Shown: one piece after another, positions 2,855 to 10,030 of the stretch
How the letters are laid out: every line of letters begins with the position of its first letter
Numbering within the stretch: the first letter of the stretch is position 1
Source of the DNA: Octopus sinensis
Taxonomy: Eukaryota
Assembly: GCF_006345805.1 (NCBI RefSeq)
Contig: NW_021827339.1
Coordinates: 1-10,506, forward strand
Direction: 5' to 3'
Length of the DNA stretch: 10,506 nt
Notes under the pieces: model-generated
The model's database searches: none
The model's input: only the letters and a program-made list of their open reading frames with translations
What the model was told of the DNA's origin: nothing
Made by a program: the position numbers and the translations under genes

Positions 2855-4670
2855 TAAGGGATAAGTGAAATACTAAAGGAACAGTATAAAAGTGTGTTCA
2901 CATCCCCTCTGGGGCACATGCAAATCACAACCCAGAAGTTTTCTTTGATGCCACAACACTCCAAAACCAAACAACAACCATCGACCACATAGACATAACA
3001 GAGAGGGATGTAAATCTGCCATAGAAGAAATGAGAATAAACTCAGCTGCTGGACCAGATGGATTCCCAGCAGTCCTCCTAAAAACATGCAGGCATGCCCT
3101 AGCGGACCACTGAAAAGCTCTTCAGTGGTTTCCTTGGCTACGTAAACTGCCCAGGGCGCTAAAAGAAGGCACCATATGCCCTATCCACAAGGAGGGAGTA
3201 GAGCAGAGGCCAAAAACTACAGGCCAGTCTCCCTGACGTCACACATAAGTAAGGTCATGGAACGAATCATCAGAAAAAAACTGATCACGTTCCTCGAAGA
3301 AAACTAACCGTCTCACTGACAACAAGCATGGCTTTCGCCAGAAGAAGCTGCCTTACGCAGCTGTTACAACACTACGACTGGGTACTGAAACAACTACTGG
3401 ATCGCTCACAGGTGGATGTGGTATATCTCGACTTTGCGAAGGCCTTTGACAAGTCGACTACGGAGTGATATGTCACAAATTACTAAGACATCTCCCCATA
3501 ACAGGAAAAGTAGGTGAGTGGATACATGACTTCCTGAAGGACAGAAGCCAGATGGTTGCAGCCAATGGAGCCCTCTCGGGAAGACACCAATAGCAAGCGG
3601 GTGCCACAGGGCACAGTCTTGGGACCCTTGCTGTTTTGGTGGCGCTCTCTGACATGCCCTTGGTAGCACAAAACAAATCCCTCACTAGCTATGCTGATGA
3701 CACAAAGGTAGCACAGGCAATCAAAACCCAGCTGATGCTGACCTTTTACAACAAGATCTGGATGCCAAACAAATGGGTTGAAGACAACAACATGCAATTT
3801 AATGCTGGTAAATTTCAAGCCTTACAAATACCAAGCTGTAAACACATATACATTACAAAACACAACTATACTGGTCCAGGAGGGATCGAAATCCCAGTAT
3901 CGAAATCAATACGGGACCTGGGGATAGACATGAGTGACATGCATCTTTTTCTTCACACATCGCGAAGGTGGCAACAATGTGCAGACGACTCACTGGCTGG
4001 ATCCTGAGGACATTCCGGACAAGAGACTGCGGACGAGACCATGTTGACACTATGGAGGACATTTGTCCTAAGCCGCCTGGACTACTGCTCCCAACTGTGG
4101 TCACCGCATAGTGTCAAACTAACACAGAGCTTGAGACAATCCAAAGACATTTCACCAAGAGATTTCTACCATGAAAGAAAAGAACTATTGGGAGAGGCTT
4201 AGGGAACTCAATTGTACTCCTTGGAACGAAGACGAGAGAGATATGCAGTGATACATATGGAAAATCCTGGTGGGACTAGCACCAAATTTGGAATTGAGAG
4301 CTGTTCCAATCCCCGTACAGGACGTCACTGTGTGGTGCCAAAGGTCCCGTCTTCCACATCCCGGGTAAGGAGCAGATACTGTAATAGCCTGGGTTCAGGG
4401 GCCCTCAGCTTTTCAACAAACTGCCAAGAAAACTGAGAGATCTACATGATGCGGATGTGGACATTTCAAAAAAACATCTAGACAAGCTGCTTTCCGGGAT
4501 CCCAGATGAACCCACTGCAAGTACGAGGTAACCTAAGGGCAGCAGACTACAAACTCTCTCTTAGATCAGTGGCCAGCCACGGCAAAACTGGACTTAGAGA
4601 GGGTAGCAACAAGGGCGGTGCCCCAGCATGGCTCAGCCGGATGGCTGAAGCAAGTAAAAGAGTAAAAGAG
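2855..4670 (+). mobile_element. 5'-truncated CR1-group LINE (ORF2 reverse transcriptase with frameshifts) ending in a (AGTAAAAG)n tail
   Basis: Motifs in order: SEILKEQYKSVFT, SAAGPDG, KNYRPVSLTS (3212-3241), HGFR, YLDFAKAFDK (3424-3453), VPQGTVLGPLLF (3601-3636), YADD (3690-3701), DLGI, TFVLSRLDYCSQLWSP (4059-4106), YSLERRRERY, PDEP, NSLLDQ. It ends in an 8-bp tandem repeat at 4653-4670, as CR1-type elements typically do. No endonuclease domain or ORF1 is present. Confidence 0.93.
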
Positions 4671-4712
<42 letters not shown>

Positions 4713-5669: not shown

Positions 5670-5749
5670 ATATATAATATAATATATATATATATATATA
5701 TATTATATATTATATATATACTTTATTTTAAGCAGCAGAAAATTCAACA

Positions 5750-5797
5750 AAAATCTGTTACTCTGAGTTTCTCGTTGCCGTTCATCAGACAGATTCT
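5750..5797 (-). ncRNA. Minimal type I hammerhead ribozyme motif, family C, left copy
   Basis: Minus strand reads AGAATCTGT-CTGATGA-ACG GCAA CGA-GAAA-CTCAGAG-TA|ACAGATTTT. Stem I has 9 bp (one G.U), the core is perfect, stem II has a GCAA (GNRA) tetraloop, and stem III CTC-A-GAG is near-palindromic. The stem II closing pair is A.A. Confidence 0.8.
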
Positions 5798-5800
5798 AGC

Positions 5801-5845
5801 AAAACTGTCTGATGAACGGAACGAGAAACTCAGAGTAAGATTTTG
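5801..5845 (+). ncRNA. Hammerhead family C, right (inverted) copy, degenerate
   Basis: Plus strand reads AAAACTGT-CTGATGA-ACGGAACGA-GAAA-CTCAGAG-TA|AGATTTTG. The core is intact, but a 2-nt deletion in the 3' strand disrupts stem I and 1 nt is lost from loop II. Confidence 0.55.
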
Positions 5846-5941
5846 TTGAATTTTCTGCTGCTTAAATAAAGCATATACTCTACCACTGGTATTTGAGTAC
5901 TCTTTTTTTCCACCTTGTTTCACATTTATGTGTTTACTCCG

Positions 5942-6030: not shown

Positions 6031-6706
6031 ATATTATATGCTCGAACTACGAGAGTAGAAAAACAGCCAACAACTGATCGTTCTTTATGTTGTTTGTCTT
6101 GTTTTCCATGTGTGTCTTCCTTTGTTCGAAAAAATAGTTCATATTCAATGTACTCGTATTTTTTGTTGAGCACGTTTCGTGACGTCCTGTGCCCACATAT
6201 GCAAATATATATATATATATATATACTTATAGATGTATGTACATATACATATGTATATAAGCATATATATTATTTATATTATTATTATATATATACATAT
6301 TTATATATAGGTAGACATATATACATACATTGATATATATGTATGTGTGTATATATATTTTTTGGGGGGTTTTGCGTATACACGCGCACTCATACACATC
6401 ATACACACACACACACATGCCTGCATATACACGTACGTATACAGTTGTATACACACATATATGAGAAAGAAACTACCTGCATATAGGTATGCGTATATAT
6501 ACATACACACTCACATGCACACAGACTCACACATTCATATATATATATATATATATATAGAATATATATGTATGTGAGTGCAACATCACAATCAAGAAAC
6601 GGCCATAATAGGCCATTCACCCACTAGAAATAACAGCCAAAGCTTCAACCGCAAAATAACATCAATTCCGTAAACCAGGAGAAAATTAAAAAAAATTTAC
6701 CCTGTA

Positions 6707-6811
6707 ATTTCTTATACGATGCACCGTTTCATCTACTGTTTAATGGTAAACTAACCTGATAAATTAAATCAAGCCAATCTACCATAGGCCCTTAGATTCA
6801 TCAGTAGAAAT
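6707..6811 (-). ncRNA. Type I hammerhead ribozyme, family A, copy 1
   Basis: Minus strand reads ATTTCTA-CTGATGA-ATCTA-[57 nt]-TAGAT-GAAA-CGGTGCATCG-TA|TAAGAAAT. Stem III is A-U, C-G, G-C, G.U with a UGCA loop, and stem I has 7 bp with a one-A bulge. Predicted cleavage is between 6715 and 6714. Confidence 0.88.
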
Positions 6812-7188
6812 AGCCAAGTCGGAACAGATATTTTTCACGAGGCATTCCCGTCCCTGCTCGGCAATATCTGACCTAAAATTTTCAAATCATCGCACTCGCG
6901 CCAAATTACGGCAGCAAATAAATATAAGCCGCCCGATTCCATTACGGAATTAACCAGAAAATTCATAATTAATCAATAGGGTGGCACAAAAAATTTGTAG
7001 AATTTTTTTTCCACCAGCGGCCTAGTGGGAAAAAATTAAATAGTCATAGACCATTTTTAAGTTCAACATCACATCAAGGAACGGCCATAATAGGCATTCA
7101 CCCACTAGAAATAACAGCCAAAAGCTTCAACCGCAAATAACATCAATTCCGTAAACCAGGAGAAAAATAAAAAAACATTTACCCTGTA

Positions 7189-7292
7189 ATTTCTTATACG
7201 ATGCACGTTTCATCTACTGTTTAATGGTAAACTAACCTGATTAATTAATCAAGCCAATCTACCATAGGCCCTTAGATTCATCAGTAAGAAAT
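7189..7292 (-). ncRNA. Type I hammerhead ribozyme, family A, copy 2
   Basis: Minus strand reads ATTTCTTA-CTGATGA-ATCTA-AGGGCCT-[19-bp hairpin]-TAAACAG-TAGAT-GAAA-CGTGCATCG-TA|TAAGAAAT. It has a perfect 8-bp stem I, a 5-bp proximal stem II, a complete core and a GUA cleavage triplet. Predicted cleavage is between 7197 and 7196. Confidence 0.92.
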
Positions 7293-7320
7293 AGCCAAGT
7301 CGGAACAGATATTGTGAGTG

Positions 7321-7373
7321 TATATAAATATATATATATATAAATATATATAATATATATAAAATATATATAT

Positions 7374-7407
<34 letters not shown>

Positions 7408-7431
7408 ATATATATAATATAATATATATAT
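7321..7431. repeat. Interrupted (TA)n tract
   Basis: Seen directly. Confidence 0.9.
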
Positions 7432-7611
7432 CGAAATTGCGAGATGATCTGGTTCTTGACTGATGACTGAGAGCTTCGAAAGTCCTGTCTGTGTGTTTTT
7501 TTGCCGTCCTTCAAAATGTTTCACGTTCTTGTCCAGTTTGTGTTTTTTTTAACGTTTACCTATATATATATATATATATATATCATATATATATGTATGT
7601 TGTGTGAGAGT

Positions 7612-7932: not shown

Positions 7933-8215
7933 GTGGTGGTGCTCGTGGTGGTTGTGCTGCTGCTGCGGCTACTGCTGCTACTGTTGTTGTTGCTGCTGTT
8001 GTCTTGCTGCTGTTGGTTGCTGCTTGCATCTATTGTTAGTGCTGCTGCTGTCATTTTCTTTGCTTTCGATGATTACTGTGTTGTCGTATATTGATCATCA
8101 CTGCTGCTGATACTTTTTCTGCTACTGCTGCGGCTGCTGCTGCTACCTTTGCTGCTGCTGCTGCTGCTGCTGCTGTTCCTTTTTCTGCTACTGCTGCTGC
8201 TGCTGCCACTACCAA

Positions 8216-8246
<31 letters not shown>

Positions 8247-8531
8247 ACTTCTTCTGCTATTGCTGTCGTTGCTGCTACTACTGCTGCTGCTACTACCTTT
8301 GCTGCTGTGACTTTTTCTGCTACTGCTGTCGTTGCTGCTACTGCTGCTGCTGCTACCTTTGCTGCTGCTGCTGCTGCTGCTGCTACCTTTGCTGCTGCTG
8401 CTGCTGTTGTTACTTTTTCTGCTATTGCTGTCGTTGCTGCTACTGCTGCTACTGCTACTCCTGCTGCTGCTGATGATGATACTTTTTCTGCTACTGCTGC
8501 TGCTGCTGCTGCTGATACTTTTAGCTGCTGC
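7933..8531. repeat. (GCT)n-derived cryptic minisatellite with recurrent codon-phased modules
   Basis: GCT/GTT triplet runs with the repeated modules ACTTTTTCTGCTACT, ACCTTTGCT and GCTGTCGTTGCTGCTACT. This tract is the source of the poly-Ala, poly-Ser and poly-Leu ORFs. Confidence 0.9.
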
Positions 8532-9600: not shown

Positions 9601-10030
9601 GCAGGAGTGGCTGTGTGGTAAGTAGCTTGTTTACCAACCACATGGTTCTGGGGTCAGTCCCACTGCGTGGCACCTTGGGCATCTGTCTTCTGCTAAAGCC
9701 TCGCGCCGACCGAAGCCTGTGAGTGGATTTGGTAGACGGAAACTGAAAGAAGGCCGTCGTATATATGTATATATATATATATAATATATATATGTGTGTG
9801 GGTGTGTGTGTGTCTGTGTTTGTCCCACTAGCATTGCTTGACAACCGATGCTGGTGTGTTTATGTCCCCGCCACTTCGCGGTTCGGCCAATGAGACCTGA
9901 TAGAATAAGTACTGTGCTTACAAAGAATAAATCCCGGGGTCGAGTTGCTCGATTAAAGGCGGTGCTCCAGCATGGGCGCAGTCAAATGACTGAAACAAGT
10001 AAAAGAGTAAAAGAGTAAGAGTAAAGAGTA
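9601..10030 (+). mobile_element. tRNA-derived CORE-type SINE (octopus OR-like) with internal microsatellite and LINE-derived 3' tail
   Basis: It has a tRNA-like head with A and B boxes. GCACCTTGGGCA..TGTCTTCT...GCCTC (9670-9702) resembles the MIR/CORE domain (GACCTTGGGCAAGT...GCCTC). An internal (TA)/(TG) tract lies at 9760-9813. The 3' 61 nt match the LINE end at 4611-4670 and end in (AGTAAAAG)n variants. The family name is from recall, not from a search. Confidence 0.9.
9608..9660 (+). promoter_or_regulatory. Pol III type 2 internal promoter of the SINE (A box 9608-9618, B box 9651-9660)
   Basis: The A box reads TGGCTGTGTGG. The B box reads GGGTCAGTCC, departing from the GGTTCRANNCC consensus at the GTTC core. 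Confidence 0.65.

What the first reader, a model, noticed from the sequence alone, without database searches (positions are those of the whole stretch)
6581..7312. Retrozyme-like element: two tandem hammerheads set to excise a 482-nt monomer (candidate circular RNA)
Seen: the element comprises about 1.5 units of a 483-bp non-coding repeat, each repeated part carrying a full type I hammerhead on the minus strand. Cleavage at 7197|7196 and 6715|6714 would release a 482-nt RNA. Each copy carries a different 1-nt lesion (stem I in copy 1, stem III in copy 2), so their consensus is a flawless ribozyme with a near-palindromic stem III (ACGGTGCATCGT). Knowledge: hammerhead-bearing tandem repeats in newts, schistosomes, cave crickets, mussels and corals (non-LTR retrozymes) yield monomeric linear and circular RNAs and spread using a borrowed RT. 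Inference: this is a cephalopod member with a monomer larger than I recall as typical and an unusual stem II. I cannot confirm from here whether it has been described.
Basis: partly seen in the sequence, partly recalled or inferred. Interest (0 to 1): 0.95.

Follow-up and report, generated by a model that had tools for sequence, protein, structure and literature searches.

The report
Hammerhead-ribozyme retrozyme insertion in a cephalopod-like genome
This is one inserted copy (about 1.5 units) of a small non-coding mobile element that carries a self-cutting hammerhead RNA motif in each unit. That kind of element is already known in many animals, including molluscs, so it is a sound but fairly ordinary find with an unusually long second stem.

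Summary
On the minus strand, 7312..6581 is 1.52 head-to-tail units of a 481-482 bp non-coding repeat. Each repeated part carries a complete type I hammerhead core: CUGAUGA, GAAA, A15.1-U16.1 and a GUA cut site. The cuts at 7197|7196 and 6715|6714 are 482 nt apart.

- **Not chance:** a strict hammerhead descriptor finds the upstream copy and nothing in 1000 dinucleotide shuffles of the window.
- **New here:** an 8-bp direct repeat (CACTCACA) abuts both ends, and the flanks are (TA)n. The block therefore went in as a single insertion, and its ends are not at the ribozyme cut sites.
- **Helix III:** as a hairpin it is about 0 kcal/mol, but it is self-complementary (12 bp, -17.5 kcal/mol), so it probably works as a double hammerhead.
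- **Helix II:** it is 66 nt, with a 19-bp extension holding 5 G·U pairs and no mismatch. It is stable only in the ribozyme polarity.

Against: no Rfam hammerhead model matches, even at E<=10. The 10.1-11.1 pair is A-U. The downstream copy has a bulge in helix I. I could retrieve no other copy, and there are no expression data.

Best reading: a non-LTR retrozyme (non-autonomous, Penelope-style) insertion in a cephalopod-like genome. It is a new member of a known kind. Interest 0.35.

The parts
6581..7312 (-). Whole inserted element: 1.52 head-to-tail units of a 481-482 bp non-coding repeat (full unit 7312..6831, then a 252-nt partial second unit 6832..6581)
   Evidence: the longest ORF inside is 43 aa; the six-frame protein search found no relatives
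7313..7320 (-). Upstream copy of the target-site duplication CACTCACA (read on the minus strand)
   Evidence: In this window, identical 8-mers that are not dinucleotide repeats occur at this spacing at a rate of 3.7e-5 per position pair
6573..6580 (-). Downstream copy of the target-site duplication CACTCACA
7189..7292 (-). Hammerhead A (type I): helix I 7292-7285 / 7196-7189 (8 bp), CUGAUGA 7284-7278, helix II 7277-7212, GAAA 7211-7208, helix III 7208-7198, cut after A7197
   Evidence: the hammerhead fold is -31.0 kcal/mol against an MFE of -33.1
7212..7277 (-). Extended helix II of hammerhead A (66 nt): 5-bp base (A10.1-U11.1 first), an internal loop, then a 19-bp hairpin with 5 G·U pairs
   Evidence: -25.5 kcal/mol in the ribozyme polarity against -10.5 on the complement
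6707..6811 (-). Hammerhead B: same core (CUGAUGA 6804-6798, cut after A6715). Helix I lacks one U (7 bp plus a bulged A). Helix III is the 12-nt self-complementary ACGGUGCAUCGU
6715..7196 (-). Predicted 482-nt RNA released by the two cuts (candidate circular RNA), GC 37%
   Evidence: circular MFE -133.5 kcal/mol, z = -3.6 against 200 shuffles, 67% of bases paired; the complement is -81.8 kcal/mol, z = -2.1
7321..7431 (.). (TA)n microsatellite next to the insertion (target context)
6537..6572 (.). TA-rich microsatellite on the other side of the insertion

Best explanation
This is a genomic insertion of a non-LTR retrozyme. That is a short, non-coding, non-autonomous retroelement whose unit carries one type I hammerhead ribozyme, and which is mobilised by a borrowed reverse transcriptase, most likely from a Penelope-like element.

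**Shown by the sequence**
- 1.52 tandem units lie between an 8-bp target-site duplication, inside a (TA)n tract.
- The insertion ends are away from the ribozyme cut sites, so both cut junctions are intact inside the insert.
- One complete hammerhead core sits in each repeated part, on the minus strand.

**Inferred mechanism**
1. The template was a circular 482-nt RNA copied more than once around, or an uncut multimer. Its cDNA was integrated by target-primed reverse transcription.
2. When the minus strand of this locus is transcribed (read-through; no promoter identified), helix III of each hammerhead is too weak alone. The two self-complementary helix III segments pair to form a double hammerhead.
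3. Both sites are cut after GUA. [quoted passage not shown]
4. A host tRNA ligase (RtcB type) circularises that RNA into a stable, highly paired circle, which can be reverse-transcribed again.

Whether this particular copy still cuts is uncertain.
For: - **Core and helices:** the full core and three helices are present, with 0 of 1000 shuffles giving any hit. The hammerhead fold is within 2 kcal/mol of the MFE.
- **Repeat architecture:**
- **Insertion:** the 8-bp direct repeat sits exactly at both ends. The local background for such non-simple 8-mers is 3.7e-5 per position pair.
- **Target:** the flanks are (TA)n. (TA)n is a preferred target of the Naiad PLEs, and partial tandems are typical of PLEs (PMC8557442).
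- **Helix III:** the hairpin is about 0 kcal/mol, but the self-duplex is 12 bp at -17.5 and the A x B duplex is -13.0. This matches the palindromic helix III and dimeric cleavage described for metazoan type I hammerheads (PMC4209133; PMC3088659; PMC7229834).
- **Helix II extension:** 5 G·U pairs and 0 A·C mismatches (sign test p about 0.03), and -25.5 against -10.5 kcal/mol between the two polarities. This points to structure kept at the RNA level in the ribozyme polarity.
- **Monomer:** z = -3.6, 67% paired, GC 37%, as described for retrozyme circular RNAs.
- **No coding capacity:**
- **Literature model:** the published model for the class is the same (PMC7761336).
Against: - No Rfam hammerhead family matches at the gathering score, nor at E<=10 even on a 121-nt slice.
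- The 10.1-11.1 pair is A-U. Apart from A15.1-U16.1, this is the most conserved pair of the motif, and it is normally G-C.
- The 66-nt helix II removes a normal loop 2, so the usual loop 1-loop 2 contact cannot form as described.
- Copy B has a bulge two pairs from the core.
- Only this one locus is available. Scans of metagenome, genome and viral collections gave only chance hits, and the ORF-based look-ups gave nothing.
- There are no RNA data, and no Penelope-like gene lies in the window (the nearby RT is a decayed LINE).
- The differences between the copies are dominated by indels, which suggests noisy assembly.
Confidence: 0.75

Rival explanations
1. It is a dead relic. The element arose as a hammerhead-bearing retroelement, but the ribozyme as it stands (A10.1-U11.1, giant helix II, no loop-loop contact, bulged helix I in copy B) does not cut at a useful rate. 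No circular RNA is made from this family any more.
For: No Rfam hammerhead hit even at E<=10. The 10.1-11.1 pair is atypical. Changes in stem length can lower activity by orders of magnitude where tertiary contacts matter (PMC3088659). Mussel retrozyme hammerheads that lack the conserved loop contacts are slower, and Penelope-type minimal hammerheads cut poorly in vitro. No other copies were found.
Against: Every invariant core base is intact in both copies. Helix I (8 bp) and the dimeric helix III (12 bp) are strong. The helix II extension keeps 19 pairs with only G·U changes. The two copies are 95% identical, so the insertion looks young.
Confidence: 0.3
2. It is not an independent retrozyme family. 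It is an internally deleted Penelope-like element: two pseudo-LTRs with their hammerheads around a 230-bp remnant of the body. The hammerheads would serve processing of the parent element's transcript, not circle formation.
For: Partial tandems forming pseudo-LTRs, hammerheads inside pLTRs and a (TA)n target preference are all PLE traits. Retrozymes and PLE pLTRs are reported to be sequence relatives in Xenopus.
Against: The unique 230 bp has no similarity to any protein in six frames. The repeat is a clean 1.52-mer of a single unit, and the hammerhead is a full three-helix type rather than the minimal PLE type. The difference from the best explanation is mostly one of naming.
Confidence: 0.15
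3. The half-unit duplication is an assembly artefact. The genome holds one unit (or a different number), and the second hammerhead is a mis-join of noisy long reads.
For: 8 of the 11 differences between the copies are single-base indels, and 7 of those are in runs of one base. That is typical of long-read consensus error. PLE-type tandem or inverted structures are known to trouble assemblies.
Against: There are also 3 substitutions. The block is bounded by a precise 8-bp duplication that sits outside the 1.52 units. Partial tandems are the expected product of this kind of element.
Confidence: 0.07
4. It is a chance hammerhead-like motif in an ordinary DNA-level tandem duplication.
For: Rfam reports no hammerhead.
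Against: 0 of 1000 shuffles give a hit. My own rough estimate, not a tool result, is that a motif with an 8-bp Watson-Crick helix I is expected well under once in a genome of a few gigabases. The strand-specific helix II, the target-site duplication and the (TA)n context also argue against chance.
Confidence: 0.01

Closest known systems
Metazoan non-LTR retrozymes (Cervera and de la Pena 2020, PMC7229834), e.g. the 350-390 bp repeats of the mussel Mytilus galloprovincialis, and coral and axolotl repeats
   Same: It has one type I hammerhead per unit in head-to-tail repeats of a few hundred bp, with low GC. It has no LTR, PBS, PPT or ORF. Its target-site duplication is longer than 4 bp, and the monomer is predicted to be highly paired. 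Like the mussel hammerheads, it lacks the archetypal loop 1-loop 2 nucleotides.
   Different: Only 1.52 units are present at this locus. The unit is 482 nt, slightly above the 150-450 range of that paper but inside the 51-972 range of the 2026 preprint. Helix II is 66 nt instead of about 4 bp plus a loop, and the 10.1-11.1 pair is A-U. Expression and copy number are unknown. No cephalopod example turned up in the searched library.
Newt satellite 2, axolotl HHR_Amex1 and ASBVd-type double hammerheads
   Same: Helix III is weak as a hairpin but palindromic, so two ribozymes of one transcript can form a long shared helix III (here 12 bp, -17.5 kcal/mol).
   Different: Here helix III has 3 pairs and a 5-6 nt loop, rather than 1 pair and a tetraloop. 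The conserved loop contacts of the amphibian motif are absent.
Hammerheads in the pseudo-LTRs of Penelope-like elements (Cervera and de la Pena 2014, PMC4209133; Craig et al. 2021, PMC8557442)
   Same: It shares the partial-tandem insertion architecture, insertion into (TA)n and a larger-than-usual helix II. PLEs are the likely source of the reverse transcriptase.
   Different: It has no RT or GIY-YIG ORF. It has a full helix III and a long helix I rather than the minimal PLE motif, and no 30-40 bp tail is recognisable.
Plant LTR retrozymes
   Same: Two hammerheads delimit an RNA that is excised and circularised, and the element is non-autonomous.
   Different: The plant elements have type III hammerheads, LTRs of about 350 bp, a PBS and PPT, 4-bp TSDs and high GC. 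None of these is present here.

Membership tests
Hammerhead ribozyme, type I | Invariant core: C3 U4 G5 A6 N7 G8 A9, G12 A13 A14, A15.1-U16.1, H17 not G | tested here: met
   CUGAUGA, GAAA and ...CGU-A are present in both copies
Hammerhead ribozyme, type I | Three helices around the core, with helix I open-ended | tested here: met
   Copy A has helix I of 8 bp, helix II of 5 + 19 bp and helix III of 3 bp. Copy B has helix I of 7 bp with one bulge
Hammerhead ribozyme, type I | G10.1-C11.1 at the base of helix II (most conserved pair after 15.1-16.1) | tested here: not met
   A-U in both copies. Natural variants at this pair, including U-U, are reported as active (PMC3088659), so this weakens the case but does not exclude membership
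Hammerhead ribozyme, type I | Match to a curated covariance model (Rfam hammerhead families) | tested here: not met
   No hammerhead hit at the gathering score or at E<=10, even on the 121-nt slice. The likely cause is the 66-nt helix II, but that is my inference
Hammerhead ribozyme, type I | Tertiary contact between helix I loop and helix II loop | tested here: inconclusive
   There is no terminal loop 2 near the core. Internal loops exist in helix II (5 bp from the core) and beyond the 8-bp helix I, read by eye. No covariation data are available
Hammerhead ribozyme, type I | Site-specific self-cleavage | not testable with these tools
   Needs in vitro transcription
Non-LTR retrozyme | Type I hammerhead once per unit in head-to-tail repeats of a few hundred bp | tested here: met
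   Two hammerheads lie 482 nt apart in 1.52 units
Non-LTR retrozyme | Low GC (<50%), no ORF, no LTR/PBS/PPT | tested here: met
   GC is 37%. The longest ORF is 43 aa and the six-frame search found no protein relatives. No tRNA-like or PBS feature was found. The repeat is a plain tandem
Non-LTR retrozyme | Target-site duplication longer than 4 bp when present | tested here: met
   8-bp CACTCACA at both ends
Non-LTR retrozyme | Monomer predicted to fold into a stable, highly paired circle | tested here: met
   -133.5 kcal/mol, z = -3.6, 67% paired, branched rather than rod-like
Non-LTR retrozyme | Many copies in the genome, with family-level conservation of the ribozyme | not testable with these tools
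   No cephalopod genome is searchable by DNA here. Scans of three collections gave only chance matches. 21 kb of Argonauta hians holds none
Non-LTR retrozyme | Expressed as linear and circular monomer RNA | not testable with these tools
   Needs RNA data
Penelope-like element (autonomous) | ORF with a telomerase-like RT and a GIY-YIG endonuclease between pseudo-LTRs | tested here: not met
   There is no ORF or protein similarity in the element. The window's only RT is a decayed LINE with relatives named jockey-like

The most novel reading that the evidence does not exclude
The 66-nt helix II is not decoration. It may define a new structural sub-type of type I hammerhead. In it, the usual loop 2 is replaced by an internal loop that contacts helix I, and a 19-bp G·U-rich arm serves a second role, such as a protein or Dicer handle or a stabiliser of the circle. 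This sub-type would be invisible to current covariance models, so a whole lineage of cephalopod retrozymes may have been missed.
Probability: 0.15. Interest if true: 0.55.

Novelty: new member of a known kind. Interest (0 to 1): 0.35.

Why it matters
**If confirmed by other copies and RNA data**
- It would add cephalopods to the animals that make ribozyme-derived circular RNAs.
- It would show that a type I hammerhead tolerates a very long helix II and an A-U 10.1-11.1 pair.
- It would show that Rfam-based surveys undercount such ribozymes.

**What this locus offers**
- It is a clean single insertion: an 8-bp duplication, a (TA)n target, and ends away from the cut sites.
- It is therefore a useful example for how these elements integrate.
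- It supports two ideas: copying from a circular or uncut multimeric template, and use of Penelope-like machinery.

It does not change the picture of the class.

Tried and rejected
**Rfam**
- I ran it at the gathering score on the whole window and at E<=10 on 6400-7500 and on 7180-7300.
- It gave no hammerhead or other ribozyme family, only sub-threshold miRNA-like hits in the microsatellite flanks.

**Search for other copies**
- I scanned metagenome, GTDB genome and IMG/VR contigs with the pattern CTGATGAATCTA-N40-65-TAGATGAAAC. The 9 loci found are unrelated chance matches.
- A 26-nt exact pattern found nothing in viral contigs.
- Exact look-ups of the two longest ORFs inside the element found nothing.
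- A concatenated six-frame translation of the element against 5.8 billion proteins found nothing.

**Related DNA**
- I fetched 21 kb of Argonauta hians and a 2-kb metagenome contig through the neighbouring LINE RT.
- They hold no retrozyme homologue and no hammerhead by either descriptor.

**Other checks**
- There is no ribozyme motif on the plus strand of the element and no tRNA-like part.
- I considered and rejected a poly(A)-dependent SINE/LINE mechanism (no A tail at the 3' end), a plant-type LTR retrozyme, and a coding element.
- I looked at microhomology between the 3' end of the insert and the target. It is weak (6 of 11), so I did not use it.

Full report
**What is in the sequence**

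Read on the minus strand, 7312..6581 is one full unit of a non-coding repeat followed by a second copy of its first 252 nt, so 1.52 units. Start-to-start spacing of the matching blocks is 480-482 bp. BLASTN gives 95.3% identity over 258 columns. A global alignment shows 3 substitutions and 8 single-base indels, and 7 of the indels change the length of a run of one base. Nothing else in the 10.5-kb window resembles the unit.

**The hammerheads**

Each repeated part carries, on the minus strand, the following layout:

5'-AUUUCUUA-CUGAUGA-[66-nt helix II]-GAAA-CG(G)UGCAUCG-U-A|UAAGAAAU

- All invariant positions are present: C3-A9, G12-A14, A15.1-U16.1 and H17 = A.
- In copy A (7292..7189), helix I is 8 Watson-Crick pairs. 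Helix II starts with 5 pairs and continues after an internal loop into a 19-bp hairpin. Helix III is 3 pairs with a 5-nt loop.
- In copy B (6811..6707), one U is missing from the 5' strand of helix I. That leaves 7 pairs and a bulged A, and helix III has the extra G.

A strict descriptor written for this check finds copy A and gives no hit in 1000 dinucleotide-preserving shuffles of the window. The hammerhead secondary structure of copy A costs only 2 kcal/mol more than the MFE: -31.0 against -33.1.

**What speaks against a working ribozyme**

- Rfam reports no hammerhead family at the gathering score. It reports none at E<=10 on a 1.1-kb slice or on the 121-nt ribozyme alone. I attribute this to the 66-nt helix II, but that is inference.
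- The 10.1-11.1 pair is A-U. Perreault et al. call this the most conserved pair after 15.1-16.1, although they found active natural variants, including U-U (PMC3088659).
- With helix II extended there is no ordinary loop 2, so the classical loop 1-loop 2 contact cannot form as described.
- The mussel retrozyme hammerheads also lack those conserved nucleotides, and they cut about eight times more slowly than the coral one (PMC7229834).

**Evidence that the RNA structure matters, in this polarity**

- The 19-bp arm of helix II has 14 Watson-Crick and 5 G·U pairs and no mismatch. It folds at -25.5 kcal/mol in the ribozyme polarity and -10.5 on the complement.
- If a DNA palindrome had simply decayed by transitions, G·U and A·C outcomes would be equally likely. 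Five to nil gives p of about 0.03 (my sign test).
- The differences between copies A and B inside helix II fall in the apical loop.
- Helix III is marginal as a hairpin (-0.2 and 0 kcal/mol). The 12-nt version ACGGUGCAUCGU is fully self-complementary as RNA: 12 bp at -17.5 kcal/mol. The A x B duplex is -13.0.
- This is the palindromic helix III and double-hammerhead arrangement described for newt, axolotl, mosquito and PLE-associated hammerheads.
- The 482-nt monomer folded as a circle gives -133.5 kcal/mol, z = -3.6 against 200 shuffles, with 67% of bases paired. The complementary circle gives -81.8, z = -2.1.

**The insertion**

- The 8-mer CACTCACA (minus strand) lies immediately outside both ends, at 7320-7313 and 6580-6573.
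- It occurs four times on the two strands of the window. In this window, identical 8-mers that are not dinucleotide repeats occur at comparable spacing at 3.7e-5 per position pair. Even allowing some freedom in the boundaries, a chance fit is about 1 in 1000.
- Beyond the duplication, both flanks are TA microsatellite.
- The block is therefore one insertion event with an 8-bp target-site duplication in a (TA)n tract.
- Its ends are not at the ribozyme cut sites, and both cut junctions are intact inside it. The template was therefore not a cut linear monomer. It was either a ligated circle copied more than once around or an uncut multimer (inference).
- There is no A tail.
- Partial tandems are typical of Penelope-like elements, and (TA)n is a preferred target of their Naiad clade (PMC8557442).
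- PLEs are the proposed helpers of animal retrozymes (PMC7761336; preprint 10.64898/2026.07.22.740005).

**Coding capacity and context**

- The longest ORF inside the element is 43 aa. A concatenated six-frame translation found no relative among 5.8 billion proteins.
- The window is AT-rich and full of microsatellites.
- At about 2900-4700 (+) lies a decayed LINE reverse transcriptase with frameshifts and stops.
- Its best named relative is from the octopod Argonauta hians (45% aa), and an Octopus protein also appears in the list. At nucleotide level it is 66% identical to the Argonauta locus and 72% to an ENA metagenome contig.
- A cephalopod source is therefore plausible but not proven.

**Other copies**

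I could not obtain any.

- Pattern scans of the metagenome, GTDB and IMG/VR collections returned only unrelated chance matches.
- Exact look-ups of the element's ORFs found nothing.
- The fetched Argonauta and metagenome DNA holds nothing similar.
- These collections are not eukaryote genome collections, so this is absence of data, not evidence of absence.

**Comparison with what is known**

- Non-LTR retrozymes are described in cnidarians, molluscs (mussel, 350-390 bp), arthropods, rotifers, flatworms, annelids and amphibians. Their units are 150-450 bp with GC below 50% and TSDs longer than 4 bp. They lack LTR, PBS and PPT, and they give abundant circular RNAs closed by a tRNA ligase.
- A 2026 preprint reports consensus lengths of 51-972 bp and relates the elements to PLE pseudo-LTRs.
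- The present element meets every sequence-level criterion that I could test.
- It differs in its very long helix II and its A-U 10.1-11.1 pair.
- I found no paper in the searchable library that reports hammerheads or retrozymes in cephalopods. That library is incomplete, and supplementary tables of earlier surveys were not examined.

**Verdict**

- The interpretation as a retrozyme-type element is supported at the level of architecture. It is untested at the level of activity, copy number and circular RNA.
- It is a new member of a known kind, of moderate interest.
- The two single-base 'lesions' should not be over-read. They are run-length changes of the kind long-read assemblies get wrong.

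Noticed in passing
window 5721-5868: A 148-bp near-perfect palindrome lies between two (TA)n tracts. Each arm carries CUGAUGA-ACGG(C)AACGA-GAAAC (5809-5829 plus, 5788-5767 minus; 0.02 such matches expected per window). That is followed by a near-palindromic CUCAGAGUA and a partial helix I complement. A relaxed hammerhead descriptor, tuned after the fact, accepts both arms, and 16 of 1000 shuffles give any hit. Helix II would be only 2 bp flanked by A·A. Rfam sees only sub-threshold miRNA-like hairpins. It could be a degenerate Penelope-type hammerhead in an inverted-copy arrangement, or coincidence inside a hairpin repeat.
   Followed up: partly
window 2900-4700 (+): A decayed LINE reverse-transcriptase fragment (YADD box, several frameshifts and stops). 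Its closest named relative is from Argonauta hians (45% aa), and related proteins are named jockey-like. It is 72% identical at nucleotide level to an ENA metagenome scaffold (L011), which probably holds host DNA.
   Followed up: partly
window 9664-9759: A 97-bp stretch matches two separate places, in opposite orientations, in the 21-kb Argonauta hians locus L010 at 81-82% identity. This is probably a short interspersed repeat shared among octopods.
   Followed up: no
window 6505-6583: The downstream target-site copy CACTCACA pairs with TGTGAGT on the far side of the TA tract. Together they form a hairpin that gives sub-threshold miRNA-family hits. This is low-complexity sequence and probably meaningless.
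   Followed up: no
window 8101-8514 and throughout: A long impure (CTG)n tract of 138 units, plus many di- and tetranucleotide microsatellites (26 TRF rows), cover a large share of the window.
   Followed up: no
window 6581-7312: The differences between the two repeat copies are 8 single-base indels against 3 substitutions, mostly in runs of one base. The pattern suggests an unpolished long-read assembly, so single-base features in this window should be treated with caution.
   Followed up: partly
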